Positions 38,521-59,900 are shown, counted from the first letter of the stretch. The stretch is DNA of 64,000 bases from Salpingoeca rosetta (GCA_033442325.1 JAWQFM010000002.1:420444-484443); one strand, 5' to 3'. A program made the numbers and translations. Notes: a model not told the origin generated them from the sequence alone.

Positions 38521-38595
<75 letters not shown>

Positions 38596-38720
38596 GAGCA
38601 CGCACAGTATTCCTGGCGCTGTGCTTCGTCGGCGTTGTCTGTTTCCTGGGGGATGCAGGTGACGAGCAGGTTGGAGAAGAAGGGCAGCAGCGACGGCAGG
38701 CACGCGCTCAGGCCTTGCAC
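35944..38720 (-). CDS. XPO5: Exportin-5, internal fragment (both ends in gaps)
   Basis: LKTLAAFVDWV..LLLMLCELL..AAADCLLLIVERKG..ERAPLL; YTFVKRLAQVITVLGTNQLC; PKNFDDY..FTLHP; QDFSDLEEWNSFFSVYRSQ. These are collinear with my recollection of human XPO5. Confidence 0.88.
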
Positions 38721-38817
38721 CTGGTTGTTGGAGGGAGGCGGGAAGAACGCAGAAGATGGGGAGGAGGGGAATGCGAGGGAGTGAGAGGGTGAGCTGAACG
38801 AGACAGGCACGTGAAGC

Positions 38818-38921
<104 letters not shown>

Positions 38922-39021
38922 NNNNNNNNNNNNNNNNNNNNNNNNNNNNNNNNNNNNNNNNNNNNNNNNNNNNNNNNNNNNNNNNNNNNNNNNNNNNNNN
39001 NNNNNNNNNNNNNNNNNNNNN

Positions 39022-42000
39022 ATGCGTCGCCGCCAGTGCCGTCCCCGCGCACCAGGGAGAGGCGGTGGCGGTTGCGGATGGAGACGGCCGCGATGACCTG
39101 GCCCGCATTGCGCGTTGTGAAGATGGACCAGCGCTGTTCCACGCTGCGCGCAAGCACGAAGCTGCACGCACCGGGAAAATCGGCATTGAGCCCGTCCACG
39201 GTGAGGAGGTAGCGCGAGTTGAGCAGCCTGCACGTNNNNNNNNNNNNNNNNNNNNNNNNNNNNNNNNNNNNNNNNNNNNNNNNNNNNNNNNNNNNNNNNN
39301 NNNNNNNNNNNNNNNNNNNNNNNNNNNNNNNNNNNNNNNNNNNNNNNNNNNNNNNNNNNNNNNNNNNNNNNNNNNNNNGGCAGAGCTCAATGTACGGCGC
39401 AACGTCGACGACTGCATGGCACGCGGAATACTCGCGACCACGCAACGTCTTGGAGCACACGCGGTCGGCCCAGTCGGCGAGGGTGGCGTTGAAGGAGCAT
39501 GGATCGGCCGGGGGAACGTCATCAATGGTGCAGAACGGGTCTGGGTCGACAAACAGGCTCGCAGCCTCCGTGTCCACGAGCCAGCTCTTGGCGTGCTGCC
39601 ACAGGCTGGCGGCCACAACGCCATTGGACGTGATCAGGCCACTCGCGGGATCGTCGTTGTTTGTGGCGTCGGCGCTCAGCGGCTGTCCACACAGGCCACA
39701 CACGCGGTTGGCAAAGGTGACAGCTGGCGCACGCACCTGAAGCTGGCCAGACGCTGGTGCCCACGTGACTGTGACGCTGTTGGGCAGGCGCACAGTGAAA
39801 ACACCAGCGCCCTTCTGCACAACGACACCCTCCACGGTGGTGAGTGGCAGCGCGGAGGTCTCCTGGCCGTTGATGGTGACAAAGGAGCCCGCAATCTCCA
39901 CGACGAGGTTGAAGCCGAAGCGCACCGCGACGACCGAGTTGCACGAGCTCAGGCCACACGCCGTCTTGCGCGCTTGCACCTCAAACTCAGACATGGCCGA
40001 ACAGTCCTTGGCAACCACGTAGTCGCAGATGCCGGAAAACGCATTTTCGTAGCCAGAGAACGTGCGAACAAGGCCAACGTCGCGCATGAAGCACGTCATA
40101 AAAGAGCCCGAGCACGTGCTGCCGTCACCAAAGCACACCCCACACTCATCGACGATGGCCGGGATGGACGTCACACCGCTCCGCACACACTGGTCACGGT
40201 AAGCCTGCACAACCTCACATGTTGAAGGCGGTATGGGTGTTGCAACTGTTGATGTAGAACCAGACACAAAGGTAAGCGTGGAGCTCACTTCGGTGTCAAC
40301 AACAACAAGTGCCTCTTCACATGCAACAACATACGGTCGAGGATCAACGTGTTCGTGACAAAAAGAAAAATCACCAAGACGGTCAGCAAGTGCATAGCAC
40401 TGATGTGGAGCAGGAGGTGGTGAAACAGAAGAGTCGATAAAGGGAGTTGCAGTCGTGGTTGTTGTGCCGTTGCCGTCTGTGCGGTCGCGCAGGCGGTCCT
40501 CGGCCTCCTGGCGCGACCTCCACGCCTCAATCATGAGCCACGCCGCGTCCAGGTCACCCGTGGCACACACGTCCTTGATGCACTCCTGCGCCATGTCGCC
40601 GGCAGCGGCACACACCGTCACTGCCTGCGCCTCAAGCTCCGCAGACTGGCACTCGTCCGAGGGCTGGTAGCCGTCCGGGCGCTTGTTGTACGTCTCCCAC
40701 GTGTTGGGCGCGTCGTACCACAGCAGCGAGGACGCGCGCGACACGCGGTCGTAGTCGACGGTGGCGCTGTCGTCTGCAGCGATGCCGTTGTACAGGGCGC
40801 ACAGGCCGCCGGTTGCGTTGTTGAAGAGCGGCGACACCGCAACGTGGATGTTGAGGTAGCGCGAGCCCTGTGCCGTGAGCTCAAAGCCCAGTGCCTCGGA
40901 GTAGAGCGTGCACGAGCGGCTGTACTCGCAGCGCACGTTCACGCCGTCCAGCGAGGCCTGGAAGGTGGGGTTGCTGCTGCTCAGCTCCGCAGCGAGGCTG
41001 TTGTACGTGCGCACGATGAGGCGGCCCGTGCTCGGGTACATGCCCACGCGCAGGCCAGACTCGCGGAACAGCGCCTCAAAGGCCGTGTTGCCCGAAGCGC
41101 TGCCGAGCGGCTCGTGCCGCACCTGCACCTCCACCAGCGGCGAGCGCAGCAGGTAGAACTCGCCCACGCCGTAGAAGTCGAAGCGCGCGCCATCGAAGGT
41201 GGTGAAGTGCGGGTCGCCCGCGCTTGTGCACAGGCCGCCACGTGAGGAGTCGACTGGCGGCTGCACGGGCGGGCGAGGATCGATCACCGGTGGCTCGGGC
41301 TCCAACGGCAACGTGGTGGTGTAGGGCGCAGCGGTCGTCGTGGTCGTGGTTGTTGTGCCGTTGCCGTCTGTGCGGTCGCGCAGGCGGTCCTCGGCCTCCT
41401 GGCGCGACCTCCACGCCTCAATCATGAGCCACGCCGCGTCCAGGTCACCCGTGGCACACACGTCCTTGATGCACTCCTGCGCCATGTCGCCGGCAGCGGC
41501 ACACACCGTCACTGCCTGCGCCTCAAGCTCCGCAGACTGGCACTCGTCCGAGGGCTGGTAGCCGTCCGGGCGCTTGTTGTACGTCTCCCACGTGTTGGGC
41601 GCGTCGTACCACAGCAGCGAGGACGCGCGCGACACGCGGTCGTAGTCGACGGTGGCGCTGTCGTCTGCAGCGATGCCGTTGTACAGGGCGCACAGGCCGC
41701 CGGTTGCGTTGTTGAAGAGCGGCGACACCGCAACGTGGATGTTGGAGGTAGCGCCGAGCCCTGTGCCGTGAAGCGGCACACACACAAACCGGGCGTGCAC
41801 CTCAAAGACGCCATGTGGGTCCTTAGCCAGCACAAAGTCACATTCGGCAAGCGGTTTCACAATCGCGCCTGGCACGGACAGGACTTGCCCGCTGGAGAGC
41901 ACGGTGCAAGTCGGGAACTGCTCTGCGCACGAAGTGCCGTCGCCGCCACACACGCCACAGCGGTCCCATGCCAGGAAACGCACATACTCGTTGTTTGCGT

Positions 42001-45000
42001 CACAGTACTCCAAGAATGACGCTGCGCCCTCGCACTGTGAATACGCGCGGCCGGACGTGAGGGCTTGGCACGCGTCACGCAAGCAGGCGTCGTACAGAGA
42101 TGAGACGAGTGAGTCAGAGCATGTGGCCGAATCAGCGACTGCGCCTGGGCTGAGGACACACAGGCGCTTTGCTTCTGTCAAGGCAGACGAATCGAGGTTG
42201 CACGGGTTTGGTGGAGGCTGTACGGGGCCAATGCATTCGCTGTTATGAGAATCAATGAGCGCGGTGCCTTCAGGAACCTGCCAGCTGTTGGCAAACACGT
42301 ACGTTCTTGCCGTGTTGATACTAGTGTATACATATCCATCCGCCGTCTTGAAGTCGTCGATCGCAGAGCCAGTAAAATCGCCGCATAGGCCGCACATGCG
42401 GCCCTTGAATGAGCTTGTGGCAGAGACTGTGATCCTGGAGAGCGCGTTGGAGATGCGAATCTCAATGCCACTGTGAAGCTCAATGCTCAGGGTTCCGTCA
42501 AGCTCGTGCGAGATTTGTGTGCTGTCCCTAGCAAGCAGCATGGGCAGGAGTGCGGTACTAGTCACTCTCCCGTTGACCATCAGTGTGCCGCTGTGGACCT
42601 CGATGTGATGCTGACCCAGCGTGCGCACGCCAACGGCAAAGGTTCCGGCAGTCGGGTGTGGAATGATTTGCACCTCAAATGAGCTTTCCTCGCAATCCTT
42701 TGCTAGAACGTACGAGCACGTTCCCGCGAAGTCGTACGCACTCAAATCGAATGTGGTGAAGTGAACGCCGCCAAATGCAGAGCAGGTTGCGAGTTCTTGC
42801 GCGCAGGAGGAGCCATCGCCAAACGCAACCCCGCAGCGGTCAATGATGGGCGGCTGCGGCGCCCACCCGCGGTCTTTGCAGAGCATGTCGTACTGGCGAA
42901 TCGCCGACGTGGCGTGCAGTGGGTAGCACATGTCAGCAAGACATGCCTCATAAAACGGCTCAGGGCTGAGCACTCGGTGGCAGGAAGCAAATGGGCCGTC
43001 TGTGTCCACAATGATGGTGCAGCGGCGGCGGCCTTCCTCGATGACCTGCGCATCTGCGTCAGCGCATGGGTCAACGGGCGTTGGCGGCACGGGCTCATGG
43101 TAGCACACGCCCTCCCTCGAAGCAAACAGCGTCGACGGCGCGGACGTGACGTTGACCACGGCCCAGCTCAGCCCAAACTTGTACGCGTTTGTGGTGAGCA
43201 CACCGGCGCTGGTGACGAGGTCGTTGGAGGTGACGTTGTCGTACTTGCCGACAAGACCACAGACGCGGTCGGAGAAGCGGTCCGGGACCCACACGGAGAG
43301 GATAGCGTCCTCAGTGTACTCAATCTCAACACCGTTGCCCATGGTCACAACCAGGGTGCCCTGCAGGGTGCGGGACACGGTGGTGCCGCCCCTGAGCAGC
43401 AGCGGAAGCTTGGTCTGCAGCTGGCCGTCCACAAGCACATCACCAGTGAACTGCAGCTCCACGACCGGTGATCCGTGTGACGTGATGCCAACGCCAAAAG
43501 TGGAAATGCCGGCGTTGGTCACGTTGCGGTTGCGCACGTGGATCTCAAACTCGTTGTACAGGCAGTCCTTGGCAAACACGTAGTCACACGTGCCGGAGAA
43601 GCTAAACACGGTTTTGTCCAGGGTCACGTAGTGGGGGTCACCAAACACGGTGGACACGCTGTACGTCTCCAGGCACGACTCGCCGTTGCCAAAGCACAAG
43701 CCACAGCGGTCAATGACGCTGCTTGCCTCCACGGGGTCTGGGCTGCTCTTGAGGCAGCGATCCTCGTAGGCAGCGTACACGCCGCACGCCTTCTCGGCGC
43801 CGCCGGTGCAGTAGTCGCTGATGCACGCATCAACGTACGCGGACGGGCTGGCCCAGGCGTGGCAGGCAGCATACGGGCCGACGTCGCTGGCAAGTGCGGC
43901 GCAGTAGTCCTCGGCCAGCGCCTGTAGCGTGGCGTTGTTGAGACAGGGACTGTCGCGCTCCAACACACGCGGCGAGCACATGGCGCCGGAAGGGCCAAGG
44001 AAGAGCGCGTCGGTCTCGGGCGAGTGCCAGGTAAGGCCGGCCTGCTCGAAGGTACACGTACCGTTGACGGCGCACCCGGGCACGTTGCTGCCGTACGTGC
44101 TGACGTCGTCCAGGGCGGTGTTGCACAGGCCGCACAGGACGCTGGAGAGACGCACGTGCGCGCTGATGGCGGTCTGGCCCGAGAACGGGTTCCACGAAAC
44201 AACCAAGCCCTCGCGCTGGGCGGTGACAATGAGGTCGAAGCCGTCGCTGCGCACGACAATGCCGCCATCCAGCACGCTCGGCACCTCGGTGACCTCAATG
44301 CCGTCGAGGAACACGCGCGGGCCGTCCAGCTCCAGCGCCTGCTCGCCAATGCGCACAAGCAGGCGCGTAAACGCGTCCGAGCCCTCGGGCTTGTAGCCGT
44401 GGATGGCAAACGAGCCGTGGGCGCAGTCCTCGGCCAGCACGTACGAGCACTGGCCGTGGAACGTCTGCAGGTCGTTGGAGACGGTGGCCACGTGGGAGCC
44501 GAGCACGGCGCACTGGAGGTTGGAGGAGGCGCATGTGGAGCCGTCACCGAAGCACACGCCGCACTCATCCAGCACCGTCTCGATGGCAGTGAAGCCAGAC
44601 TCAATGCACAGGTCCTCCAGCGCAACAATGTCTGTGCATGCGGCCTTGGCAGCCGGTGTTCCAATCAACAAGGTTAAGCTGAGATCGATTATGGCGGACG
44701 TGTCGGTTGAAATGCTCGTGGTGTCCGTGGCAGACTCCGCCTCAGCTGCAAGGGTGATGCAAAAGTCGTACACGCATTGCTCAAACAGCCTGCTGGTTCT
44801 GCCGACGCCAGCGGCAAGACATGTTGCGTACGGGCCAGCGGTATCGCGCAGCACGTGGCAGTAGTCCTGTGCCACTTGCAGAAGCTCTTCAGATTGCTCG
44901 CAAGGGTTGCGGGGTGGGGTGTTTGGATCAACAACAACGGTACCGTTGGCACCAGTGCCACACTGTTCTGGTTTGGCCCACTGGATACCAAACGCCCACG

Positions 45001-48000
45001 CGGCAGCCACGCTGTCACTCAAGTGCGCTGCGCCCATGCAGAGCCCGCAGCCACGTGCCAGCAACCGCTTCCGCACCTGCGTGGTGACGACGTCCTCGCC
45101 GTCAAACGCAAGCACAAGCTGAGGCGTACGCACAGTCAAACCCGCGGCCGCTGTCTCAAGCACGGTGCCGCTGTTTGTCGTGAAGGGGAACTCAAACACG
45201 TACCCGCCATCAACCGTGGCCAGACCAAAGACAAACTGCAGCTCGTCGCCGGTGGAGACGCGTGTGCGCGCCCTCTGCCTGACGCCGTTGAGTAAGATGC
45301 CGCCAGCACCAAACACGGGCCAAAACTTTCTGCGGCGGATACCCAAGAGCGTCGCCAGGGTGAAGTCAGAGCGCATACCGTCTTGCTCTGCAGTCACGTG
45401 CACAACGCTGGGAAGCAAGCGAATGACCTCTGTGGTGGCGTTTTGTGGCCGGTCAAGCTCAACCACGACAGAAGTCCCGCTTTGCGTGTACGAGCAGCGC
45501 TCGAGCGTAACAGAGAGGGAAGACAATCGACAATCCTCCAAAACCGTGTACGCCGACGTGCCCGCAAATGTAAACGTGCTGTTCGTCTCAAAGGGACGTA
45601 CGGCAGATGCTCCACGCAGCGTGCATTTGGTCCACTCATCTGCGCATGCCGAGCCGTTTCCGAAACAGACACCGCAGATGTCAACGACATCCTCAATGAC
45701 GACAAGCGACCGCTTGCACGTGCGCTGGTAGTCAGAGATGGCGGTGCAACTGCCTTGCATCGCAAGTTTCTGGGTGGAAGCAGAACAGTACGAGGCCAAG
45801 CACGCCTCGAGGTATGCAGATGGGTCGTGGACGGAGAAGCAGGGCGATAGTTCGCTGTTGGCACGGGCAAGCACGTTACAGTACTCCGTTGCTTGTGCCT
45901 GGACGTCTCCGCTTGCATCTGCACACGGCCCGCTTGCAGCAGTGGTAGTGTCCTTGGGTGGCGGGACGCACACCTTTGGTGCAAACATGGCTGTTTCTGC
46001 AGATATGGCCAGTGTTTTCGCGTCATTTATAACGCTTGCTACACCGTTTGGAACGCGAGAGAATGACGTGCACCAGCCAAACATTGCGGGAACCCGGTCT
46101 GCCTGAATGGCCAGCTTGACTGAGACGGGCGACACCGTGATGGCAATGCCGTATGCCGGGATGGCGACGGTGACAGTTGCGCTGCTGGACAGCTGCGAGA
46201 CACGCGTGTCGTCCGAGGGGAAGAGCAAAGATACACCAGCACCCGCATCATATGCCACTGTACCCGCATCGCCACTGTGCTGCACCTGAAGCGATCCGCT
46301 GCTGGCGATGGTTAGCTGCCAGCTATTGTGGCGAGAAACGCCGACTGCAAACGTGTCAGTCGTCTGGCGTGAAAGCGTCACCAACAGGCTTTGCGCATCA
46401 ACTTTGTCTGCAAGCAGCAGCACCTCACACTCAGTTGGCACGGTACCCAGTGCAGCATCGTCGAGCGTCACCACAGAATTCACGCCAGAGAGGCTGCACT
46501 GTTCGCTAGTCTGCGCACATGATGTGCCATCACCGTAGCAGATGCCGCACACATCCCGAACGGAGTCAATCTCAAGCAGCCCACCGGTACGCGTGGCGCA
46601 CGCGCGCTCGTACATGCCGAGCAAGTGGCACGCTTCCTGGCGGGCAATTGCCGCTGAGCTGGCAGCACACACACGCAGTACACACAGGCTGAAATACGTT
46701 TTGGTGGGCTCCACGGAGCGGCACTGCTCGTACTGAGCCGTTGGCTGCTCATCGTTGAGGTCGGCGCACAGTGTCTTTGCGAGATCGCACAGCCCATCAT
46801 CAGTCGCTGTCGGAGGATCCACAACTGTGCCGTTGTCGTTGGGTTGAACGTTGCAGGTTGATGCTGACGCGGCTGCAAGGACGTTGCTCGGTGTCTCAGA
46901 CACAGACGCGAGGCACGCACTCCTCGTTTCCCCGCTGATGGAGGCAGCGGTGATGATATTGCTTCCAACTTGCACGTGCGTTCTGGAATCAGCTCCGTCT
47001 GTGACGCGAACCTGAACCAGCAGCGGCTGCGGTGTTGTCGTGCCGCTCGCCACTGCTGTGCCGTTGTACATGTGCACAGTCATCTCCGAACCGTCGTGCG
47101 TGAGCAAGAGGGACGGCAGGTAGTATGGGAAGCCCGTCAGAATGCGATCTTTACCTAGCAGCACACGGCCAGACTGCCGCGGATCAATCAGCAGGGATTG
47201 GACGACACCCTCTTGCTGTGAGCCAGACGCAACAGCTGTTGTGTCATTTACGGTGATGGTCACAGCGCCGGTGTGCACGTTGCGCATTACCTGCAAGTGC
47301 TCCGTCTCCAGAAGCAACACGCTGCATGTTGTTTCGTTGCTGACGTCGCCCAACGTCATGAGAACGCTGGAGCTTGTCGTGTAGCGGGGATCGGGTGAGA
47401 ACGTGATCACGGAGGTGTCCAAGGCCATACAGCCATTGGCGAGGTTGCACGTTGAGCCATCTCCGTCACACACGCCACACACATCGAAACTTGAGACGAT
47501 GCCCTGTACATTGTTGGCAAAGCAATGCTGCTCAAGGGCTGCTAGCCGGCTGCAGCGCTCATTCGTCATCTCCGCATCGGCCGTCGAGCTCGGTAGAGAG
47601 CAGAGGGCGCGAACACATCCCTCGTACACGGCGGTGAGGTTGATTGCTTCTCTACACGGAGCATAGTCGCTTCCAAGCACAATGCTGCACATGCTCTGCA
47701 CACGCTCGCTTGCACCTGCGCTGTCGCACACAGCGTCCTCTGGCTCCGGCGCGTTGCACGTCGGTGATACAAACAGAACGTCGTCGCCAAGGCGCTGGAG
47801 TGACCCAACGCTGCCACCAGCGCAAACGCCGCCGCTGACACGCACGTCTGTCATCGCGGATGTGATATCTGCGCCAGCTCCAGCGCCAGGCAGAAGTGAG
47901 GCATGCACGGCAATGGACCACCCCGTTTGCGATGAGGTGAGGCTCACCTTGACCAGGCCACCAAACAGCGTTACGGCACCCGTTGAACTCACGAGCCCAA

Positions 48001-50990
48001 TGTCGCTACTGCCCAGCATGGCGGGCAGAGTCACATCAGAGCCATCAACAAGAACAGTACTGCCGCCGTCTCTGACCTCAACTGTGATTGTCGTCGTCGC
48101 ATTGCTCCGACTGGTGTTGATGTCGTTCGCACCATTGTCAGCTGGTACGGAGACAGCAATGGCCAGGTCGGCCCCGCCGTTTTGCGTCTGGATGGACAGC
48201 ACATGCGCGCGAGAATCTTCGATGCCAACGGTAGCAGAACTCGCTGAAGAAGAAGAAGAAGACAAGGTCAGCACCTCATACGCGCATTTCTTCTCAAAGA
48301 CTGTGGTTGTAGCGTCAAATTCGGTAAGCAAGCCAAGCCTGCCATCAAGACTGCAGAAAGAGCCGCGGAAGGCGCTCACGTATGGCAGGATGCATGACGA
48401 GCTGTCACCACCACATACCCCACACACATCGCGGGTGGCTGTGGGCAGTCGCAGACCACACTCCTTCTCTGCTCGGGCAATGGCGTCGCACGCCGCAGCC
48501 TCTGATGCGCTGCAGAAGGATTCGATGCATGTACGTACAAGATCGTCCATGCGCGCAGCCAGCGTGGGGCACGTGGCCTCAAAGGCCAGTTTACTTGCAT
48601 TGCTAGAGAGCGCTGAGCAAAACTCCATTGCAGCAGCAAGTGTCTCTGCTGTAGCCGCTGCACACGGCTGCTGCTCTGTCACAGTCACAGACGTGGGGCA
48701 AACCGCGTCGGTGACTGCGTGCTTCTGCACATCTTCAGGTGCTGGTGCCTGGGTGTTTGGCAAAGCACAGAGGCCACATGCCTGATCCTGATGGCCGATG
48801 CCTTGCTCGGGAGCAATGATTTGAACGTTCGTGCTGCTGAACACAATACGCACACCCGCATCTGGGATGGCGGCTGTGACAACACCTTCATCGCTGATAC
48901 CTGCGATGTGCATGTGTGACCCGAACACATGACCAGCAGCAAGCCGCTGTGGTTCAGAGTTGAAGGTGGCGACGGGGACGTCTGATGCACTGCTGACAAA
49001 CAGCGACAGCTTGTCCTCGCCGGCGGAAATGGTGATGGACTCCACGCTGTTGTCGGCGCTCGAAAAGTTGGCGACAATTCCAAGAGGAACGGTGCCGCTG
49101 CTATCGCCACCGCACATCGAGAGAAGGTGATACGTGCACGACGGATACATGGGAACACTGACATCCTGGTAGAAAGACTTGAAGATGCCCCGGAATGCAT
49201 AGTCACATGTAACCTCCCCAGCACAGGGCAGCTCGCTGCTGCAGGGCGTGCACACATCGGTAGCGCTCGGCTCAAGCGTGATAGGTGCCCCGGCCTCCAA
49301 GCAGGCGTTGGCATATGCGTCGCGTGTAGCACAGATTGATGCATGGGCATTTTCGCATGGGGCAGATTCACACGCGTCAATGTACGGCTGTGGATCAACG
49401 ACAGCCTGGCAGGCAGCGAATGCACCGTACCGATCTCTGAGCGCAAGGCAAGCATCCGAGTTGCAAGCAGCAGGCGGCTCCTCTTCGTCTGAGCACGTGC
49501 GGTTGGCAAACTTGAGCAGGTGGCTCGTGAAGCCAACAACTTGTTGAGACCCGTAAAGGTACGGGGAATTGTCCTCCATCAACCCAACAATTGTGTCGTC
49601 GCTGGCAACGCCGTTGAAGTTGCCGCAGAGACCGCACATGCGCTTGCCCAGGAACGCAGCACTTCCTTGAACGGCGATCTTGCCTGTCACAACGGACCAG
49701 GTGACCGTCAGGGTGAGGTCTGGGACAGCCACCTCAAAGCCAGACGACAGACGTGACACCACACTGCTGCCGCCCAGCGCAAACCGAATACCTTCGAATG
49801 GCTCCGTGCCAACGAAAGCTTCCCACACGCCGTCGTTCACGTAGAATGAGACGGTGTCATAGTCAAAGACTTGTACCGCAACGCCAACGACACACCGCTG
49901 AGAGCCGTCACCACAGGCCGCAAGCGTCGCCTGCACCTCAAACGCGTCGGACTCGCAGTCCTTGGCGACGACGTAGGTGCACATGCCGGGGAACTGCCAC
50001 ACGTGCTCATCAAAGGTTTCAATGAGCATGCCGTCGCGCACGGTGCAGGTCGCATCTGCCGCGCACGTGGAACCGTCACCGTCGCACACGCCACAGCGAT
50101 CCACCACAGCGGCGTCGCGCGTGTGGCCCTCGGCGATGCACAGCTCGCTCACCGTCTGCACAAACGTGCACCCAGCCTGCTTGTACGTGCTCTCGCTTGT
50201 TTCCTCAGCTGTCTGGCACACCTCATCAATGCACGCATCAAAGAGGGCGCCAAAGTCCAGCGTAGAACTGCTGCCGCTGCTGCTGCGGCACGACTCGAAG
50301 AAGCCGCTTCCAGGTAGCAGCTGCGAGCATGCTTCCTGTGCAAGCGTCTCGTCCGCACCAGGGATGCTGGCGCACGCCTCCCCGGCATCCGGCGGTGTGG
50401 GCCGCGTGGGCTCGGTGCAGGCTGGGTTGGTGCCCAGCGCGTCGCTGGCGTCAGCAGTCTGCCAGCTGCTGAAGAAGCCCGCCTGTGTTCCTGCCACGGT
50501 GCCGTCGCTCTTGGTAAAAGGGTCGACCCCAGGGAAGCCGCCACACACGCCCTCAACGGCCCCAGCGTACACATCCTCCGCCACCTTCACCACGGCCTCG
50601 TAGCCGTCCCATGCCACCAACACCTTGCTGGCATGAAGTTTGGCCAGGACCGTCGCGCCCTCGCGCACGATTTCGTGGTTGTTGATGAGCTCGGCGGGGA
50701 AGGAGGACACGGCGCTGCGGCCAACGCGCACGCTCGTGTCGGATGCAAGCACGATGGTGGGGATGCCGGGGACCTCAATGGCCAGGCCGCCGACGCACTG
50801 CGTTGCCCCGCACGCCACGTGCTTCACGTAGACGGCAAACGCATCCGAGGAAGCAGTGTCGTTGGCCGTGACGCTCATGGTCTGGTTCTGCGTGCGCAGC
50901 ATGACGTAGTCACAGCTGCGCGGCTCCGAAAACACGGCGTCGCCAATCGTGCGCCAGTGGCTCGCACCGGACACGCGGCACGTCTCATAC
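39022..50990 (-). repeat. Tandem array of ~14 VWD(-C8) modules; two further VWD-like domains at ~51040-51480 and ~53050-53540
   Basis: Repeated CxxxG/GDPH..TFD..F.G.C.YVLAKDC, xCGLCGNF.G...D and C8-like CxxL..GPFAAC...P.PY..AC..D.C motifs. Confidence 0.85.
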
Positions 50991-53900
50991 GCACCGTCGT
51001 ACGGCTGCAGCTTGCGCCGCACAATGCCGCCGTCCGTGCACGTGCCCATGATGCCGAGCGACGCGCTGCAGTAGTCGCGGGACACACGCCCGTCAACGTT
51101 GAAGAACTTGCCGGAGAGCGTCACCGTGACCTTGAGGAAGTCTGGGCCGGTGACGACGTACGAGCGCTGCGACTCGCGAACAAGCTTGTACCCGTACCCG
51201 AGCTGGAGCGAGCCACTCAGGTCGAGCAGGGAGCCGCCCACGCGCAGCGCAACGGCCGCCGTCTCAAAGTCCGCGTCCAATACAACGGTCACGTCGTCCT
51301 CAATCACAATGCGCACTTGGTTCGTGCACGAGGCCGAGGAGTACAGGCACTTGACCTGGCGCGCGTACACCTCAAACGCCTCAGTGGGGGACGCGCTCAT
51401 GAGGAACGTGCCCTGCAGATCAAACGTGAAGGAGCGGCCAATCAGGTTGGTGAAGTAACCCTCGCCAAAGATGGACCACAGCGGCAGCTGCACCACAGGC
51501 AGGTCTACGTCAGACACGGAGCAGTCTGCGCCAGACTTGCCAGCCGTGCACGAGGAGCACTGGTCGTCGCCCTGCCAGTCGGGCTCGCACAAGCAGGTGC
51601 CCGAGGTGACCCGGCACGTCCCGTGGTCGGAGCAGGGGTGCACCGCACCGCCCGGACACACACCCGCACACGAGTCGCCCCAATAGCCTGAAAGGCACGC
51701 GCAGCTTGGAGAGCTGGAGGCCGCGTCAAAGGTGCCGAAGAAGCACGTCTGGCTGCAGGCAGCACCGAAGAAGTCTGGGAAGCGGATCACGCCCTGCGGG
51801 AAAGACTGGCAGTACGAGGCGCCGGGCCACGTCGTGACGACGTCCAAGGACGCCTGGCACATGTCCGCAAAGCCAACGATGGGCACAATGCCGAGCGCCA
51901 GGGCCTCGCCTCGCGAAATGTCGGCCGTGCACGAGTCCTCAAAGTACTGGCGGATGGCCGGCCCCAGCTGGCGGCACGTGACCCCAAAGGCGGAGGTGGC
52001 GTTGAAGGCGGCCTGACACCGGCGCTGGGCCTCGATACGAAGCGTGACGCTCGTCCACGACGTCTTGTACAGCGCGTCAATGCCCGTCGACATGCTGTCA
52101 ATGGCAATGTTGGCGTCCGAGAAGCGCCAGGTCGGTGCGCGGTACACGCTGCGCGGTGGCAGGTAGAGGCAAGGGGCGTCAAACTCCGCCGACGCGCAGT
52201 CAATGCTGGACGCGCTGTCGCGCACGCTCTCGCCCTGGCCCTCGTTAAACTTCCACAGGGAGGCGAGCCCGCTGGCGTCTGGCTGCACACTGGTGCCCCA
52301 GGTGCGGGAGATCTCGCGCGCGGTCAGGCGCTTGTTCCAGATGCGCAGCTCGTCAATGGAGCCGACAAAGACAGATGCCGGCGCAGAGTCGCCGCCAATG
52401 GTGGAGAGGCCAAACTGGCCCAGCGTCAGCGTCCCACCGGGGCGGAACGGGTTGCCGGCCAGCACAAACGTAAACGATTTGGGCTGTGGCAGGCCGTCCG
52501 AGCCGATGGTGGGGTGCGACACAAAGTAGTGCAGCTCCAGCAGGTTGTTGAGGCCGTTGAGGACGGGCGCCACACCAGCGAAATCTGGTTCCAGCTGTCG
52601 AGCTCAAGCGCAATGTCCGTTTCGTATACGCGGCCATTCCAGATGATGACGAGCTGCCCCGAGACAAACTCGGGCGGGCACGGCGTGACGCTGTCCAGGC
52701 ACACCAGCCGGTTCACCACGGCGAACGTGTGGCTTGTGGCAAAGGACAGCAGCGTGCCCCCGTGCGCCTCGGCAAACACGAGAAACTCGAGCGTGATGGC
52801 GGCGTCGGAGAACGTGTACAGCGGCTTGCTGGAGCAACCCGTGTCGTTGAAGTGCAGCGCAAACCCTGCCACGGAATCCTCGCGCCGCTCGTTGTAGCCG
52901 GCGTACCCGTACACCACGCCAAAGGGCGAGTTGGCGCGGGTCACCGCCCAGAAGGGCCCAACCAGCTCGTGGATGTTGGTCTGCGTCAGGTTGGTGGAGA
53001 CAATGGTGCCCTGGCCAACGTCCGCGAGGAACTCACCGTCGGCGTTGAACACAAAGTCATTGGTGGGCGTGTCGTCGCAGTGACCGAGCATGCCGCCAGC
53101 AAAGTTACAGATGCCCACGGGTGCGTACATGCGCGCGCTGAGGGCGCGTCCAAACACGCGCACGACAATGCGAATCTGCTTGTCCTCGCTGACAATTGTG
53201 TACGCGTGCGCCCCGGAGCGACGCAGCACGTAGTCTTCGGCAATGGTGAAATCAACAACCTGGCCTCCCAGGCCAACCTCGACCGGCCTGCCGCCAGACC
53301 ACATCAGCACCGCCTGGCCGTCCTCGTACGGCGCGCGAAGCACAAACACCGTCGAGCCCACAGTCACGGCAACCGCCGTCACGCAGAACGCCTTTCCACC
53401 GCGGCACGTCGTCTGTCGCACGTGCAGCTTCAGCTCGGGCTGCTCAGAGTCAAACACAAGCAGCTCGCCAGAGGCGTAGTAGTTGAACGCAGCGCCGTCC
53501 ATGCTCACAAAGTGGCCAAAGCCATCCACAGCAAGGTAGGGCTCTCGCCCGGGCGTCAGCTCGGTCGAAGCCACGGAGCAATCATAGCCAATCCAGCCGT
53601 CTGCACACCGCGAGCAGCTGGTGCGATACGGTGCCTTGGTCGACGGATGCTGCTCTGGTACGTGGTGGTTGGGATACGTGTAGTCAAACTCACGGCGCAC
53701 GCGCCTGCGCGCTGCTTGTGTCGATAATGCGTCGCTGTCGGCGCTGCTGCTCTCGTTGTCCTCGTCACTGTCCAGGTCGCGGCGCGGGCGGTACTCTTGG
53801 TAGTCAATGCCACTCCACCGCAGCTCACACTGGCACTCGCCCGTGGTCGCGCTGCAGGTGCCGTGGCCGTTGCACGGGTTGCTGCCGCCGCCCGGGCACT

Positions 53901-56900
53901 CAAAGTCGCACGTGTCGCCCCAGTAGCCGTGGCGGCAGCGGCACACGGGCTCGTCGAGGCCGTTTGCGGGCGTCGGCGCAACAGTGTCTGGTTGCGTCGT
54001 GGTGCTGCCACCGGTGTCAGAGCCGCCGTCGCCGTCGCCGTCGCCGTCGCCGGGAATGGTGCCCGTGCACGCCGGTGCATCTGCCACGCGGAGGATCAGG
54101 TACTTGTCGTGGAAGTTGGCCTTGGTGTTGGTCAGGACCCACGTCAAGCTGTCGGTTGCCGTGGCCAGCACAATCTTGAACACGTAGTGCACGCGGCCGG
54201 AGCGGAAGCGGGTTGGCTGGCCCAGGTTTTCGTTGGTGCGCGTTGCCGTGGACGCTGCGGTTGATGTGCCCTCCTCAGCAAAGAAGGGTGGCAGGTCTGT
54301 TGCCGCGGGCGTCACAATAAACTTGTTGTCCGGCCCGATGGGGACATTGAGGGGAACCGAGTTGAAGTTCTCGTAGCCGAGCCACACCTCATAAACGCCG
54401 TTGTCCGTCTGAGAGACGCACTCCAGCTTGGGAACAAGCGGGCGCGCATCCGAGGCCAACAGCGATACGTCGCCCGAAGCACTGTCATCCTGCGACCCAG
54501 ACCCGGTGTCCTCAGCCACCACCTCGGAGCGGTCAACGACGTCACCGTGCCCGGCCTTGCAGCGAAGGCCGCAGCCCTCGGCGCCGTAGTCCTCGTGACA
54601 GCGCGTGCAGGCAGGGTACTCCCATCCTTCCTGGCAGTAGGTGCAGCTGGCACCTGTCCAGTGTCCGTTGTCATCATCATCGTAGCACTGACAGATGTCC
54701 TCATCCTCGCCAACGCCGCGGCCGTTCACGCAGTACACGCTGCAGCCCCTCGTTGACCAGCCAATGTAGTTGTCCTCGCAGCGCTCGCAGCCCAGGCCCG
54801 TGTAGCGGTCGGCGCAGCGCTCGCACGCGTCGCCGTCAAAGCTGTTGTCGCACACGCACTCGGGCACGTCCTTTCCGGGCGGCACGACACACTGGCCGCG
54901 GCCGTAGCAGGCAGGGATGCCGGGGCACACCAAACGCTCGCACGCGTCGCCCTCAAATCCGTCGTTGCACAGACAGAACGTGTTGTTGCCCTTCACCAGG
55001 CACAGCCCACGGCTGTTGCAGTCCGGCTCCCCAGGGCAGTCGATAAACTCGCAATACTCGCCCTTGCGCCCGGGCTTACAGTGGCACTGGAGGTTGTCCA
55101 GGGAAATGCCGAGCGCTGGGTCCGGCGACACAAAGCTGCGCCGGCTTCGCTCAGCCACGGCCTCCTGCGAGGCGTGGCCGCGCCCAATCACAGCGCGACG
55201 CCGCCGGTTGGGCGCCGTGCTGTTGCTGTTGTTGTTGCCGCTGCTGCCGTCCATCAGCGTCGAGGTGCCATTGTTGCTGCCGCTGCTCGTGGTGTTGGCA
55301 CTGTCCATGCCGGGAACAGGTGTGCAGAGCAACGTGGTGTTGACAGGCTGGTCAGCGGTGTCAACGTACGTGCGACTTGCTTCGTCAAGGGTCACGTTGA
55401 CACCGTGCACTTCCAGGAACTGCTTGCCGCTGATCTGGTACGTCGCTGTTGCCAGCTGCGTGAGGTTGCAACCAAGCGGCAGAGGCCCATCCCACACCGT
55501 GCAGTTGGGGCCGGCCCAGTCCTGGATGCACTGGTTGCAGCGTGAGCCAAGGATCTTCTCGTTGAAGCACTCGCATTCCGGAACCACGCTATCGAAGTAG
55601 AGGACACACTCTCCCTGCCCAGAGCACATGGGTTCGCCGGGGCACACGTACTGGGCACAGTCCTCGCCGCCAAAGCCCGTGTCACAGTCGCAGGAGGGCA
55701 GCGCGTCCCCGTCCGGCCACACGCACTCGCCGTGGCCAGAGCAGCCGTTGGGACAGTCAAAGTCGTTGCAGTATGTCCCGGTAAAGCCGGGTTTGCACCC
55801 GCACGTGCCGAGGCCGCCGCACTCAATGTCGCAGGCAACACCGGTGTAGCATGGGTCGCACTCGCAGTTGCCGCTGTTCATCGGCACCTGGTTACCGTGT
55901 TCGCACGGCAGCTCGCATGCCGGGCCCATCCAGCCCTTGGTACAGTTGAGGCAAATGGGCGGGTCAACGCCGGCGTAGCACGTGCCGCGGCCGTTGCAGT
56001 CTGGGGTGCCAGGGCAGTCTGGGATGTCGCACCCAGGGCCGCGCCAGCCGGGGTTGCAGAAGCACAGCTGTTCCTCCGAGTTGCACACGCCGTGGCCAGT
56101 GCAGCTCTCGCCCGTGCCGGGGCAGCCCTTGATGTTGCACTTGGGCCCCCACCACGCCTCGTCGCACTCGCATGCGCCATTCACGCACACGCCGTGGTCG
56201 CTGCACTCGCGGTCGCAGTTAGGGCCGTCAAAGCAGACGGCGGGCTCGCACACGCAAATGCCAGAGTCCATGGGGATCTGCGTGCCGTTCACGCAGGGGA
56301 TGTCGCAGGCTGGACCCATCCAGCCGTGGTGACAGCCGGTGCACACTGGCGGATCTTGCAGGCCGGTGCAGTCGCCGCGACCAAAGCAATCTGGCTCGCC
56401 AGGGCAGTCTGGGATGTGGCAGCCCGTGCCAATCCAGCCGGCGTCACAGGCACACTCTTGCGTGGCCACGTTGCAGAGCCCGTGATCGGTGCATGGCGAA
56501 CCCACACCCGGGCACGCGCGCACCTCGCACAGGGGGCCCCACCAGCCAACGCCAGGCACACCGCAGTCGCAGAACGCGTTGCCGTCGTCGTCTTCAGCAC
56601 ACGTGCCGTGGTTTGAGCACTCCAGGTCGCAGCTGAAGCCGGAAAAGCAGTCGTCGCACTTGCAGTTGCCAGAGTCCATGGGCTCCTGGTGGCCGTGCAC
56701 ACAGGGGATCTCGCAGGCCGGGCCCATCCAGCCTTGCGTGCAGTTGCGGCAAACGGGCTCGCCAAGGACCTCATCAAACACACAGTCGCCGCGGTCATTG
56801 CAGTCATCGGGGCAGTCGAGCTCCTCGCAGCCTTCGCCGCGGAAGCCATCGTCGCAGGTGCAGACCTGGGTCACCTCGTTGCAGTCGCCATGCCCGGAGC

Positions 56901-59900
56901 AACTCTCGCCGTTCATGCCGGGGCAGCCGCGCACGCTGCAGTCATCGCCGTACCAGCCAAGCCACAGGCCGTCCGCTCGTCGCTCGCACTCGCACATGCC
57001 GTTGTTGCACGTGCCGTGACCAGAGCACATGATGTCGCAGCCAGCACCGGAGAAGCACTCATCGCAGACGCAGACGCCGGAGTTCTTGGGTGTCTCCGTG
57101 CCGTTGATGCAGGGCTCGTTGCAGTCAATGCCCATCCAGCCATCGTCGCAGTTTATGCAGCGCGGCTGCTCGCGGGGAAGGCCCTCGCACGTGCCGCGCC
57201 CATAGCAGTCGGGGTCACCGATGCAGTCCGGCTGGTCGCAGCCCTCGCCCAGCCAGCCAGCGTGGCATAGGCACTGCTGGGTGCTCGGCTGGCAGTCGCC
57301 GCGCCCAGAGCAGTCAATCCAACGCCAGGGCAGCCTCGGCGCTGGCAGAACTCGCCCCAGAAACCCTCACCGTTGAACGTGCCGCAATCGCAGGTGCCGT
57401 TCACGCAGGTGCCGTAGTCGTTGCACAGCAGCTCGCAGCCGTCGCCGTGATAGCACGGCTCGCACACGCAAATGCCCGAGTCCATGGGCTCCTGGCGGCC
57501 GTGAATGCAGGGCTCATCGCAGGCCTCGCCCATCCAGCCAACCGCACAGCCGGTGCAGCGCACATCGACAGTGCCATCCTCTAATACGACTGGGCGACAC
57601 GTGCCACGGTCATTACAGTCCTCGGGACAGTCTGGCGTGTCGCAGCCAATGCCCTTCCACCCGGGCTCACAGGTACACTCAAACAGGGCTTCGTTGCACT
57701 CGCCGTGGCCACTGCAGTCCAGCGGCACGCCTCGCTGCAGGACCGTGCGCGTGCCGTTGATGACCTGCACAGTGCTGCTGGAGCCGGGGCAGCCGGGAAT
57801 CTCACAGCCGGGCCCGCTGTAGCCGAGGTCAAAGTCGCACTGGCACACGCCATTGACACAGTCGCCGTGGTCACCACACACGGTGTCACAACTGATGCCC
57901 GTGTAGCAGTCCTCGCACACGCAGCCCGCCGTCTGGTTGGCAAAGGCGCCGTGCACGCACGGCAGCGAGCAATCTGGGCCCGTGAAGTTGCTGTTGCACT
58001 GGCACTGCTGCGTCAGCGGGTCGCAAGTGCCTTGGTTGTTACAGGGCGGGTTGCCGGGGCACACGGGCTCCTCACAGGCGATGCCGCGCCATGCACCGTC
58101 GCAGACACACTCTCCGGTGGCGCCGTTGCATTCGCCGTGGCCGTTGCAGTTGCCGTTCTCGCCAGGGCAGCCGGGGCGATCGCACAGCTCGCCCCGCCAC
58201 GAGTTGCCAACCTCTGTTGTGTAGCAGTCGCACTTGCCGTCGACGATGACGCCGTGGCCAGAGCACATGGCATCGCACCCGCGGCCGCTCCAGCCAGGGT
58301 CGCACTTGCAGTAGCCAGAGTCCATGGGCTCCTGGTGTCCGTGCACACAGGGCTGCTCGCAGGCCGGGCCCATCCAGCCGTCCTCGCAAGACTGGCACGT
58401 GGGCTGTCCAGGGGCAGTGGCATTGCAGAAGCCGCGGCCGTTGCAGTCTGGCGTGCCGGGGCAGTCTGGGATGTGGCAGCCAATACCGGCCCAGCCCGGG
58501 CTGCACACGCACTCCGTGGTGGCAGCGTTGCACTCGCCGTGTCCAGAGCAATCCAAGCCGTACAGACCGGGGCAGCCAGGCACCTCGCACAGGGAGCCCT
58601 TGTAACCGAGCTCAAACGTGCACTGGCACTTGCCGTTGACAATGCGGCCGTGGTTGGAGCACTCTGCGTCGCAGCCACGACCTGCCCAGCCGGGCTCGCA
58701 CACGCAGATGCCCGAGTTTGGGGGATCTTGGACGCCGTGGACGCACGGGTCGTTGCAGGCAGGGCCCATCCAGGGGCCACGGCAGTCCTGGCACAACGGT
58801 GTTGGCAGCGTGTAGTTGCAGAACCCGCGACCAAAGCAGTTTGGTGAGCCGGGGCAGTCTGGCGTCTCACAGCCGGGTCCCGTCCAGCCGGGTTCACAGT
58901 CGCACCTCGCTTCAGCGGCGTTGCACTCGCCGTTGCCAGAGCACGACTGGCCAATGCGCATGCGCTCCACGCCGCTCAGGCCACACACGCCGTCTGCCGT
59001 CTCGCCTCCGATGCAGGGCCCATTGCCCGGGCAACCGCGGATGTCACAGCGCTCGCCCCAGTAGCCGGAGAGGTAGTGGCATACGCAGGTCTTGGTGGCG
59101 GAATCAATGGTGCCGTGGCCGTTGCATTCGAGGTTGCAGCTCTCGCCTGTCCAGCCAGGGTCGCACACGCAGATGCCCGAGTTGGGAGGGTCTTGAACGC
59201 CGTGGACGCAGGGCGTGTTGCAGTCCGGGCCCATCCAGCCCTGCTCGCAGTTCTGGCACACGGGATTGGGCAGCGTGAAGTTGCAGTAGCCGCGACCAAA
59301 GCAGTCGGGCTCACCAGGGCAGTCTGGCGTCTCGCAGCCGGGGCCGCGCCAGCCAGGGTTGCACTCACACACGGCGTCGGCGGTGTTACACTCGCCGTTG
59401 CCCGAGCAGGACTTGCCAACACGCATGCGCTCGGCGTCGCTCAAGCCGCACACGCCTTCTGCCTCACTGCCTGGGAGACAGGGGCCGTTGCCTGGGCAGC
59501 CAGGTACGTCACAAAGGTCACCCCAAAACCCTTTCTCGTAGGTGCAGATGCAGAGCTTCAGGTCGGTGTTGTACTTGCCGTTGTCACTGCACTCTGCATC
59601 GCACCCGACGCCGGCCCAGCCGGGATCGCACACGCAGATGCCCGAGTTTGGCGGGGTTTCCGTGCCGGCAACGCACGGCTCGTCACAGCCGTACCCCATC
59701 CAGGGACCCACGCAGTCCACGCAGCGCACAATGTCGTAGTTGGTGGAGTCGCACGTGCCTCTGTCATGGCAGTCGGGCTCACCGGGGCAGTCTGGGATGT
59801 GGCAGCCGACGCCGCGCCAGCCGGGGTAGCAGGTACACGTGTGGTCTGCGTTATTGCACTCGCCGTTGCCCGTGCAGTCGACGCCGTAGCCAGGGCAGCC

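What the first reader, a model, noticed from the sequence alone, without database searches (positions are those of the whole stretch)
39380..50990. VWD-C8 modules closed by a DxCGVCxGDGSxC motif instead of TIL
Seen: ten modules end in DRCGVCDGDGSTC, DVCGVCGGDSSSC, DVCGVCDGDGSTC, DVCGICYGDGTSC, DICGVCFGNGSAC, DECGVCFGDGSTC, DRCGLCFGNGESC, DRCGVAFGDGSSC, DRCGVCGGDGTSC and DECGVCFGDGSTC, each directly before the next VWD. Established: animal D-assemblies are VWD-C8-TIL(-E), and DxCGVCGGDGSSC is the end of the ADAMTS/papilin Cys-rich domain. Inference: an alternative, possibly pre-metazoan, D-assembly.
Basis: partly seen in the sequence, partly recalled or inferred. Interest (0 to 1): 0.7.

Follow-up and report, generated by a model that had tools for sequence, protein, structure and literature searches.

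The report
TIL-less VWD-C8 repeats with ADAMTS-type knot
A giant surface-protein gene of a probable choanoflagellate strings together a dozen mucin/von Willebrand-type building blocks, each closed by a tiny disulfide knot also found at the end of the ADAMTS cysteine-rich domain instead of the usual TIL domain, and a sponge has the same design, so it may be older than animals.

Summary
All ten quoted 13-residue motifs lie in one minus-strand ORF (38708-52573), each after a C8 domain and 6-7 residues before the next VWD. An eleventh, degenerate copy is also there.

Pfam finds VWD and C8 but no TIL. The whole genome has no TIL above cut-off. The motif is not a truncated TIL (hhalign probability 0.05%).

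The motif is the C-terminal half of a 26-residue, four-cysteine mini-module. That module ends the ADAMTS cysteine-rich domain. It also forms tandem arrays in prokaryote-like proteins and in a cadherin of this genome.

Cysteine co-loss indicates the motif rewires the last C8 disulfide: Cys5 pairs with the motif's middle Cys, not with the last C8 Cys as in animals.

The same VWD-C8-knot arrays occur in the sponge Corticium candelabrum and in metagenome proteins. The design is therefore not purely pre-metazoan.

Lang et al. 2016 already reported choanoflagellate VWD/C8 without TIL. I found no description of the knot.

The scan noted this architecture before on other DNA of this genome (s1-438981, probably the C34 paralogue).

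No RNA evidence was obtained. The local assembly has gaps, a frame change and a probable misjoin.

The parts
38708..52573 (-). Open frame of 4621 codons. It holds a LamG tail and EGF at the N end, then at least 12 VWD-C8 units. It is part of a larger gene that probably starts near 61454.
50063..50986 (-). Unit 0: VWD, C8 and knot DRCGVCDGDGSTC (knot at 50063-50101)
49223..50062 (-). Unit 1a: VWD, C8 and the degenerate knot DVCTPCSSELPC (49223-49258)
48392..49222 (-). Unit 1b: VWD, C8 and knot DVCGVCGGDSSSC (48392-48430)
47447..48391 (-). Unit 2: divergent VWD-like part, C8 and knot DVCGVCDGDGSTC (47447-47485)
46517..47446 (-). Unit 3: divergent VWD-like part, C8 and knot DVCGICYGDGTSC (46517-46555)
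45644..46516 (-). Unit 4: divergent VWD-like part, C8 and knot DICGVCFGNGSAC (45644-45682)
44531..45643 (-). Unit 5: VWD, C8 with a long insert, and knot DECGVCFGDGSTC (44531-44569)
43673..44530 (-). Unit 6: VWD, C8 and knot DRCGLCFGNGESC (43673-43711). This is the unit that was modelled.
42803..43672 (-). Unit 7: VWD with a GDPH motif, C8 lacking Cys5, and knot DRCGVAFGDGSSC lacking the middle Cys (42803-42841)
41927..42802 (-). Unit 8: VWD, C8 and knot DRCGVCGGDGTSC (41927-41965)
40112..41926 (-). Composite unit 9: a VWD start, a duplicated segment, a Thr-rich linker, a GDPH/RGM-like VWD, C8 and knot DECGVCFGDGSTC (40112-40150). The part around 41290-41765 is probably misassembled.
39379..40111 (-). 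Unit 10: VWD and the start of C8, cut by the N gap at 39236-39378
39022..39235 (-). Start of a further VWD lying between the two N gaps. The gene's true 3' end is unknown.
52426..61454 (-). Upstream ORFs 57153-61454 and 52426-57135. They carry a signal-peptide-like start and teneurin-type EGF arrays. They are probably the 5' part of the same gene, joined to the VWD ORF across a frame change inside a LamG domain near 52560-52575.

Best explanation
The region encodes the middle of a giant extracellular protein, probably anchored in the cell membrane. It is built from at least 12 head-to-tail units of about 290-300 residues.

Each unit is a genuine VWD beta-sandwich plus a C8 helical bundle, the first two modules of the animal D assembly. 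TIL and E are absent. In their place, ten residues (G-V-C-x-G-D-G-S-x-C) follow the last C8 cysteine.

Together with the C8 tail, these residues make up most of a 26-residue, four-cysteine mini-module (GCDG..S....DxCGVCGGDxSxC). That mini-module ends the ADAMTS cysteine-rich domain. It also exists as a free-standing tandem repeat in prokaryote-like proteins and in a cadherin of this same genome.

The knot is welded into C8:
- Its middle cysteine takes over C8 Cys5. In animal units Cys5 pairs with the last C8 cysteine. This rests on co-loss statistics.
- The last C8 cysteine then pairs with the knot's final cysteine. This step is inferred from invariance and from the ADAMTS13 pattern as I remember it.
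- The result would be two crossing disulfides that lock the chain's exit from C8, six residues before the first cysteine of the next VWD.

The likely consequence is a compact, fairly stiff string of beads rather than a disulfide-polymerising mucin. Every unit has an even cysteine count, and there is no TIL-type intermolecular cysteine. The paralogue on another contig ends in a Thr-rich stalk, a transmembrane helix and a cytoplasmic tail.

The same unit in a homoscleromorph sponge makes this a lineage of D assembly shared by choanoflagellates and early-branching animals.
For: - Motifs and spacing.
- VWD and C8 by Pfam: 453 and 122 bits, with no TIL or ADAMTS_CR even at E<=10 on single units.
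- No TIL above cut-off in the six-frame genome: best 21.1 bits against a cut-off of 24.5.
- Every C8 in the genome and 19 of 20 motif hits lie at the two paralogous loci.
- AF2 model of one unit: pLDDT 87, pTM 0.84. It matches MUC5B, VWF and MUC2 D assemblies at Z 22-25 over about 265 residues, and the alignment stops at the C8/TIL boundary.
- The DxC of the motif aligns with the last C8 cysteine of FCGBP and MUC2.
- Junction profile against ADAMTS13 and ADAMTS5: E 8e-4.
- The 26-aa repeat profile matches ADAMTS5 and ADAMTS13 over its full length, E 1e-8 and 2e-6. It also matches Pfam ADAMTS_CR_3 positions 86-115 at 46 bits.
- hhalign of the junction against the repeat: 98%, E 1.4e-13, 25 columns (repeated).
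- hhalign of the junction against the animal TIL start: 0.05%.
- Free-standing repeats in a cadherin ORF of the same genome.
- Co-loss in 212 knot units: Cys5 and the middle Cys are lost together 11 times and singly 2 and 3 times, Fisher p 4e-14. C60, C75 and C85 are never lost.
- Co-loss in 640 animal units: Cys5 is lost 11 times, and 8 of those also lose the last C8 Cys.
- Two-unit model: pTM 0.74, with the knot at pLDDT about 80 and no disordered linker.
- Even cysteine counts in all units.
- The paralogue has a transmembrane helix and a cytoplasmic tail.
- Sponge and metagenome homologues have the same roughly 300-aa period and no TIL.
Against: - Model coordinates could not be read, so no S-S distance was measured. 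Only one of the two knot disulfides has data behind it, and the ADAMTS13 pairing is from memory.
- The first cysteine of the free 26-aa module lines up with C8 Cys6 (invariant here), not with Cys5. The topology is therefore similar to, not identical with, the free module.
- No RNA evidence: all runs laid were contigs of uncertain kind.
- The gene model is imperfect. It has two N gaps, a frame change at its 5' join and a probable misjoin.
- Membrane anchoring is seen only in the paralogue.
- The organism name (Salpingoeca rosetta) comes from earlier unchecked notes and was not verified here.
Confidence: 0.72

Rival explanations
1. The motif is a truncated or degenerate TIL domain. Under this reading the first cysteines of TIL were kept after the rest was lost.
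For: - Position: it starts where TIL starts. The structural alignments of the model to VWF and MUC2 end within a few residues of the C8/TIL boundary.
- Animal units also have a cysteine 3-4 residues after the last C8 cysteine (consensus).
Against: - No Pfam TIL hit on any unit at E<=10.
- hhalign of the knot tail against a 638-row animal TIL-start profile: probability 0.05%, E 0.7. The same tail scores 91-98% against the 26-aa ADAMTS-type repeat.
- No TIL above cut-off anywhere in the genome.
- The cysteine wiring differs from the animal unit.
Confidence: 0.04
2. The resemblance to the ADAMTS end and the 26-aa repeat is convergence of a short Cys/Gly-rich motif. On this view the knot arose within C8 independently.
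For: - Only 13-25 residues are compared, and such motifs can recur.
- The partner of the middle Cys (C8 Cys5) is not the positional equivalent of the free module's first Cys.
- The animal C8 tail already has a C..GV....D.C outline.
Against: - hhalign gives 98%, E 1.4e-13 over 25 columns, which reaches upstream of the 13-mer.
- The same genome carries the free-standing module in a cadherin, so a donor was at hand.
- Nine positions are near-invariant in both sets.
Confidence: 0.12
3. The knot-type unit is derived rather than ancestral. On this view TIL-E was lost and replaced in choanoflagellates and in one sponge lineage, or the gene moved between them.
For: - The tree is unrooted and its deep branches are weak (SH-aLRT 5).
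- Lang et al. report TIL-type mucin-like proteins in Porifera and Ctenophora (PMC4948705).
- Only one named sponge species was found.
Against: - The genome has no TIL at all above cut-off.
- TIL-type units form one supported group (98) and the sponge knot units another (97). Choanoflagellate-like units lie outside both, as in the species tree. A single knot-to-TIL switch in animals explains this.
Confidence: 0.2
4. The locus is a decaying duplicate or an assembly artefact and not a working gene.
For: - N gaps, a 1-nt frame change inside a LamG domain, an exact 300-nt duplicate, and 456 alternative letters in the contigs of four runs.
- A near-identical paralogue on contig C34.
- No RNA evidence.
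Against: - The frame stays open for 13.8 kb.
- Cysteine counts are even and cysteines are conserved in every unit.
- Units have one-to-one orthologues in metagenome protein P0029, with support 97-99.
- The stretch is held by runs from nine studies.
Confidence: 0.1

Closest known systems
Animal D assembly (VWD-C8-TIL-E) of VWF, gel-forming mucins, FCGBP and zonadhesin
   Same: VWD and C8 are homologous by sequence (Pfam; PDB profile hit to FCGBP at E 8e-29) and by predicted fold (Z 22-25). The units repeat in tandem as in FCGBP. Some units keep the GDPH motif.
   Different: There is no TIL and no E. Ten residues replace about 90-130. Co-loss indicates that the last C8 disulfide is rewired. No odd cysteine is left for intermolecular bonding. 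The unit period is about 300 residues rather than about 400.
C-terminal mini-module of the ADAMTS cysteine-rich domain (Pfam ADAMTS_CR_3 positions about 86-115; ADAMTS13 residues about 532-555 in 3GHM; ADAMTS5 in 9RWM)
   Same: The DxCGVCxGDxSxC string and the GV element upstream are shared. An upstream Cys pairs with the middle Cys, so the disulfides probably cross in the same way.
   Different: Here the motif is fused to a C8 domain, not to the rest of an ADAMTS cysteine-rich domain, and no spacer follows. The upstream partner is a C8 helix cysteine. No junction reaches the Pfam model.
26-residue GCDGVPNSGKxxDxCGVCGGDGSSC tandem repeats. These occur in metagenome proteins P0102 and P0137 (which has a JDVT-CTERM sorting signal), in P0163, and in a cadherin ORF of this genome.
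   Same: The consensus is the same over 25 columns (hhalign 98%).
   Different: Those are self-contained four-cysteine repeats in arrays of 3-11 copies. Here there is a single half-copy per unit, dependent on C8.
Choanoflagellate VWD/C8 proteins noted by Lang et al. 2016 (PMC4948705)
   Same: These are very probably the same genes. The paper states that S. rosetta and M. brevicollis have VWD combined with C8 and lack TIL.
   Different: The paper treats its predictions as likely false positives. I found no mention there of the closing motif, its ADAMTS relationship, the sponge counterparts or the disulfide change.

Membership tests
Animal-type D assembly (VWD-C8-TIL-E) | VWD domain | tested here: met
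   Pfam PF00094 at 453 bits with 7 stretches. The model matches VWF and mucin VWD at Z 22-25. Three units are too divergent for Pfam.
Animal-type D assembly (VWD-C8-TIL-E) | C8 domain after VWD | tested here: met
   Pfam PF08742 at 122 bits. The profile hits the C8 of FCGBP, MUC2 and VWF.
Animal-type D assembly (VWD-C8-TIL-E) | TIL domain after C8 | tested here: not met
   No PF01826 hit at E<=10 on single units. hhalign against the animal TIL start gives 0.05%. The genome-wide best is 21.1 bits, below the 24.5 cut-off.
Animal-type D assembly (VWD-C8-TIL-E) | E module between TIL and the next VWD | tested here: not met
   Only 6-7 residues separate the knot's last Cys from the first Cys of the next VWD.
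Animal-type D assembly (VWD-C8-TIL-E) | C8 Cys5 bonded to the last C8 Cys | tested here: not met
   Animal units: Cys5 is co-lost with the last C8 Cys in 8 of 11 cases. Knot units: Cys5 is co-lost with the knot's middle Cys 11 times and the last C8 Cys is never lost. This is statistical inference, not a structure.
Gel-forming mucin | Three N-terminal VWD-C8-TIL units, long PTS domains and a C-terminal cystine knot | tested here: not met
   No TIL and no CTCK hit. Only a short Thr run lies inside unit 9. The C end of this gene is hidden by gaps.
ADAMTS cysteine-rich domain (Pfam ADAMTS_CR_3) | Terminal DxCGVCGGDxSxC string | tested here: met
   Junction profile against ADAMTS13 and ADAMTS5 chains at E 8e-4 and 4e-3. 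hhalign to the repeat that matches ADAMTS_CR_3 86-115.
ADAMTS cysteine-rich domain (Pfam ADAMTS_CR_3) | The rest of the ~115-residue domain, followed by the spacer | tested here: not met
   No ADAMTS_CR or spacer hit on any unit at E<=10. C8 lies upstream and VWD downstream.
26-residue four-cysteine CGVCGGD repeat | Own first cysteine (GCDG) 13 residues before DxC, pairing with the middle Cys | tested here: inconclusive
   C8 Cys6 lies 15-17 residues before DxC and aligns within 2 columns of it. Co-loss, however, assigns the middle Cys to C8 Cys5. The pairing in the free module is known to me only from memory of ADAMTS13.

The most novel reading that the evidence does not exclude
VWD-C8-knot is the ancestral D assembly of the choanoflagellate-animal lineage. 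On this reading the animal VWD-C8-TIL-E unit arose once, when TIL-E displaced the knot and the last C8 disulfide snapped back onto the C8 terminus. The knot, the end of the ADAMTS cysteine-rich domain and the prokaryote-like 26-residue repeats would be copies of one ancient mobile four-cysteine mini-module.
Probability: 0.35. Interest if true: 0.7.

Novelty: new variant of a known kind. Interest (0 to 1): 0.55.

Why it matters
D assemblies are the polymerising heads of mucins and von Willebrand factor, and how they arose is an open question. The published picture stops at 'choanoflagellates have VWD plus C8, and TIL appears in animals'.

This work adds four things:
- The TIL-less unit is not an incomplete fragment. 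It is a closed, repeated design with its own cap.
- The cap is a recognisable mini-module shared with ADAMTS proteases.
- The cap changes the C8 disulfide wiring.
- A sponge uses the same design, once fused to a thrombospondin C-terminal cassette.

That gives a concrete candidate ancestor that can be tested by structure and disulfide mapping. It also gives a defined switch (knot to TIL-E) to look for in other early-branching animals.

Tried and rejected
- Word search with a stand-alone three-unit query returned nothing at E<=1e-10. This is uninformative, because the candidate list was probably swamped.
- The ESM Atlas search gave only generic VWD/C8 clusters.
- A full-text search for the motif string found no paper. 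Searches for the ADAMTS13 disulfide map and for C8-TIL disulfides in the mucin papers did not yield the pairs I needed.
- Read laying returned contigs only, so expression, strand and transcript ends could not be read.
- Model coordinates are not exposed, so cysteine distances could not be measured. I used cysteine co-loss instead.
- Most cluster look-ups gave no names. Only Corticium candelabrum was named.
- The idea that the neighbouring thrombospondin fragments next to P0001 meant a 'mega-TSP' was dropped. That family is defined without VWD.
- The organism was not verified independently.
The upstream ORFs were scanned separately, by reference.


Full report
WHAT IS THERE

The finding lies inside a single minus-strand open frame, 38708-52573 (4621 codons). 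Two N gaps (38922-39021 and 39236-39378) run through the frame near its 3' end, and a dinucleotide microsatellite follows them.

An eleventh, degenerate copy (DVCTPCSSELPC, aa 1106-1117) closes an extra C8.

Pfam on the whole frame gives VWD (453 bits, 7 stretches) and C8 (122 bits, 7 stretches). A LamG tail and an EGF lie at the N end. There is no TIL.

I also scanned the units one at a time at E<=10. This again gave only VWD and C8, with the VWD model starting 6-8 residues after the previous motif. Three units (aa 1395-2310) keep C8 and the motif but have a VWD part too divergent for Pfam.

The upstream ORFs 52426-57135 and 57153-61454 are teneurin-type EGF arrays behind a signal-peptide-like start. 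They are probably the same gene. The join to the VWD frame is a one-base frame change inside a LamG domain near 52560-52575, not an intron. I scanned these ORFs separately and did not join them.

Downstream of 38.7 kb lie unrelated genes: an Alg9-like transferase, a glutamate dehydrogenase and WD40 proteins.

IS IT MORE THAN CHANCE

The genome (G000) has 55.4 Mb in 68 contigs. Earlier unchecked notes of this scan call it Salpingoeca rosetta; I did not verify the name.

A degenerate DNA pattern for the motif occurs 20 times in the genome, against 0 for the reversed control. Nineteen of the 20 hits lie at two loci: this window and contig C34 at 648-668 kb. Those two loci also hold every C8 domain of the genome.

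No TIL reaches Pfam's cut-off anywhere in the six-frame genome. The best hit is 21.1 bits against a cut-off of 24.5.

WHAT THE MOTIF IS

A 94-position profile of C8 plus motif hits the C8 domains of FCGBP (E 8e-29), MUC2, MUC5B and VWF. The motif's D-x-C aligns with the ordinary last cysteine of C8, as in '..WRtpDxC'. Only G-V-C-x-G-D-G-S-x-C is therefore extra.

A 36-position profile of the tail hits ADAMTS13 and ADAMTS5 chains exactly at the end of their cysteine-rich domains, E 8e-4 and 4e-3.

I searched 1.84 billion representative proteins with a 53-row C8+motif profile and found 1594 hits. Of the best 150, 31 carry the motif.

Three of those 31 (P0102, P0137, P0163) have no C8. They consist of 9-11 tandem 26-residue repeats with consensus xGCDGVPNSGKxxDxCGVCGGDGSSC.
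- The repeats score on Pfam ADAMTS_CR_3 at profile positions 86-115 of 115: 46 and 45 bits for P0102 and P0137 (cut-off 21), but only 13.6 bits, below cut-off, for P0163.
- Their profile matches ADAMTS5 and ADAMTS13 chains over its full length, E 1e-8 and 2e-6.
- P0137 ends in a JDVT-CTERM sorting signal. P0163 lies on a contig with a T4 gp13-like gene. These are prokaryote- or virus-like contexts.

Profile-profile comparison of the C8+motif junction with the 26-residue repeat gives 98% probability, E 1.4e-13, over 25 columns. The same tail against a 638-row profile of the animal TIL start gives 0.05%.

The one motif hit outside the two VWD loci (contig C17) lies in a cadherin ORF. There it is part of at least three free-standing tandem copies of the 26-residue module.

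So the closing motif is the C-terminal half of an independent, widespread four-cysteine mini-module, grafted onto the C8 tail. It is not a truncated TIL.

FOLD

I modelled an AlphaFold2 unit (previous knot + VWD + C8 + knot, 307 residues) on a 52-row alignment of knot-type units. It has pLDDT 87 and pTM 0.84.

It matches MUC5B, VWF and MUC2 D assemblies at Foldseek E 1e-16 and Z 22-25, with about 265 aligned residues. The aligned ranges run from the end of the preceding E module to the first residues after C8. That reading of the ranges uses published VWF domain boundaries as I remember them.

A two-unit model has pTM 0.74. The knot sits at pLDDT about 80, and confidence does not collapse between the units. 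This suggests an ordered connector.

DISULFIDE WIRING, FROM CYSTEINE CO-LOSS

I analysed 212 non-identical knot-type junctions taken from the window, the paralogue, the sponge and the metagenome proteins.
- C8 Cys5 and the knot's middle Cys are missing together 11 times and singly only 2 and 3 times (Fisher p 4e-14).
- Cys6, the last C8 Cys and the knot's last Cys are never missing.
- Unit 7 of the window (DRCGVAFGDGSSC) is one of the 11 co-loss cases.

In 640 animal TIL-type units, Cys5 is missing 11 times, and in 8 of those the last C8 Cys is missing too.

This indicates that the animal Cys5-to-last-Cys bond is replaced here by a Cys5-to-middle-Cys bond. I infer that the last C8 Cys then bonds to the knot's final Cys. 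That would give the crossing pattern I remember for ADAMTS13 (532-548 and 545-555), which I could not confirm from a paper here.

Other co-losses reproduce sensible VWD pairs, which supports the method.

WHO ELSE HAS IT

The word search returned seven proteins with the same roughly 300-residue VWD-C8-knot period, 6-13 units each, and no TIL (P0001-P0007). Every animal hit (FCGBP, zonadhesin) had TIL and no knot.

Cluster look-ups name Corticium candelabrum, a homoscleromorph sponge:
- XP_062520253.1 has seven VWD-C8 units with knots, then EGF_CA, thrombospondin type-3 repeats, TSP_C and LamG. It has no TIL.
- 'Mucin-19-like' XP_062520176.1 and 'CSMD3-like' XP_062519752.1 also carry the unit.
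- The ENA contigs that carry P0001-P0005 share 90% clusters with these proteins, so they are from the same or a closely related sponge.

A maximum-likelihood tree of 87 units, with the knot columns removed, gives three groups:
- the TIL-type animal units, on one side of a branch (SH-aLRT 98);
- the sponge knot units (97);
- the window's units, interleaved one-to-one with metagenome protein P0029 (97-99) and with P0006, P0007 and P0039.

The tree is unrooted, its deep branches are weak, and the animal sample is bilaterian only. It is compatible with a single switch between knot and TIL but does not give the direction.

LIKELY FUNCTION

The C34 paralogue is near-identical over several units. After its VWD-C8-knot array it continues through LamG-EGF-VWD groups, a Thr-rich stalk, a transmembrane helix and a cytoplasmic tail of more than 200 residues with NPxF and NPLY motifs.

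All units in the window have even cysteine counts. No TIL-type intermolecular cysteine exists.

I therefore favour a long, disulfide-stapled ectodomain of a surface adhesion or receptor protein over a polymerising mucin. This is inference. The window gene's own C end is hidden by gaps, and I obtained no expression data: the runs found are coded, of uncertain kind and kept as contigs.

WHAT WAS KNOWN

Lang et al. 2016 (PMC4948705) state that VWD appears with C8 in choanoflagellates and that these proteins lack TIL. They regard their own predictions as probable false positives.

I found no paper containing the motif string. I found no description of the knot, its ADAMTS relationship, the sponge counterparts or the rewired disulfide. 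Shoemark et al. 2019 on the thrombospondin superfamily do not mention VWD.

Another first-stage note of this scan (s1-438981) reports the same mini-module on another piece of this genome, most likely the C34 paralogue.

VERDICT

It is shared with a sponge rather than strictly pre-metazoan, and the bare absence of TIL was already in print. I class it as a new variant of a known kind, of moderate interest.

Noticed in passing
window 40452-40751 and 41343-41642; 41290-41765: There is an exact direct repeat of 300 nt or more, spaced 891 nt apart, inside unit 9. Contigs of four public runs from four studies carry 456 other letters in place of window 41290-41765. The C34 paralogue continues the VWD normally at that point. 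The reference is probably misjoined here.
   Followed up: partly
window about 52560-52575: A LamG domain is split by a one-base frame change between ORF 52426-57135 and ORF 38708-52573. This is either an assembly indel or a real lesion. No intron signal is needed to explain it.
   Followed up: partly
window 57100-57200: The EGF reading frame of ORF 52426-57135 runs on upstream of its ATG at 57135 (C-I-N-C-D-D-G-W-M-G-I-D-C). The last ~40 codons of ORF 57153-61454 look out of frame. A second frame switch or a small intron probably joins them.
   Followed up: no
L010 8650-8950 (G000:C17:1158650-1158950, + strand): A giant cadherin-domain ORF of the same genome carries at least three free-standing tandem copies of the 26-residue GCDG..DxCGVCGGDGSxC module (Pfam ADAMTS_CR_3 positions 80-115).
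   Followed up: partly
P0176 (Corticium candelabrum XP_062520253.1); L001 15700-18100: This sponge protein combines seven VWD-C8-knot units with EGF_CA, thrombospondin type-3 repeats, TSP_C and LamG. None of the classes in the 2019 thrombospondin-superfamily paper includes VWD.
   Followed up: partly
G000:C34:641300-656958 (L005-L007), minus strand: The paralogue continues after its VWD-C8-knot array with three LamG-EGF-VWD groups, a Thr-rich stalk, Gly-Ser repeats, a transmembrane helix and a cytoplasmic tail with NPxF and NPLY motifs. Large parts of this locus read N.
   Followed up: partly
window 38411-38953: Dense 8-14-nt-period simple repeats and a dinucleotide microsatellite flank the two N gaps at the apparent 3' end of the frame. 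The final 100 or so codons of the ORF are probably not coding.
   Followed up: no
window about 43640-43660 (aa 2975-2978) and unit 9 (aa about 3790): GDPH, the autocatalytic Asp-Pro cleavage motif of some VWD domains, survives in only two VWDs of this protein. It is the consensus in nearly all sponge units.
   Followed up: no
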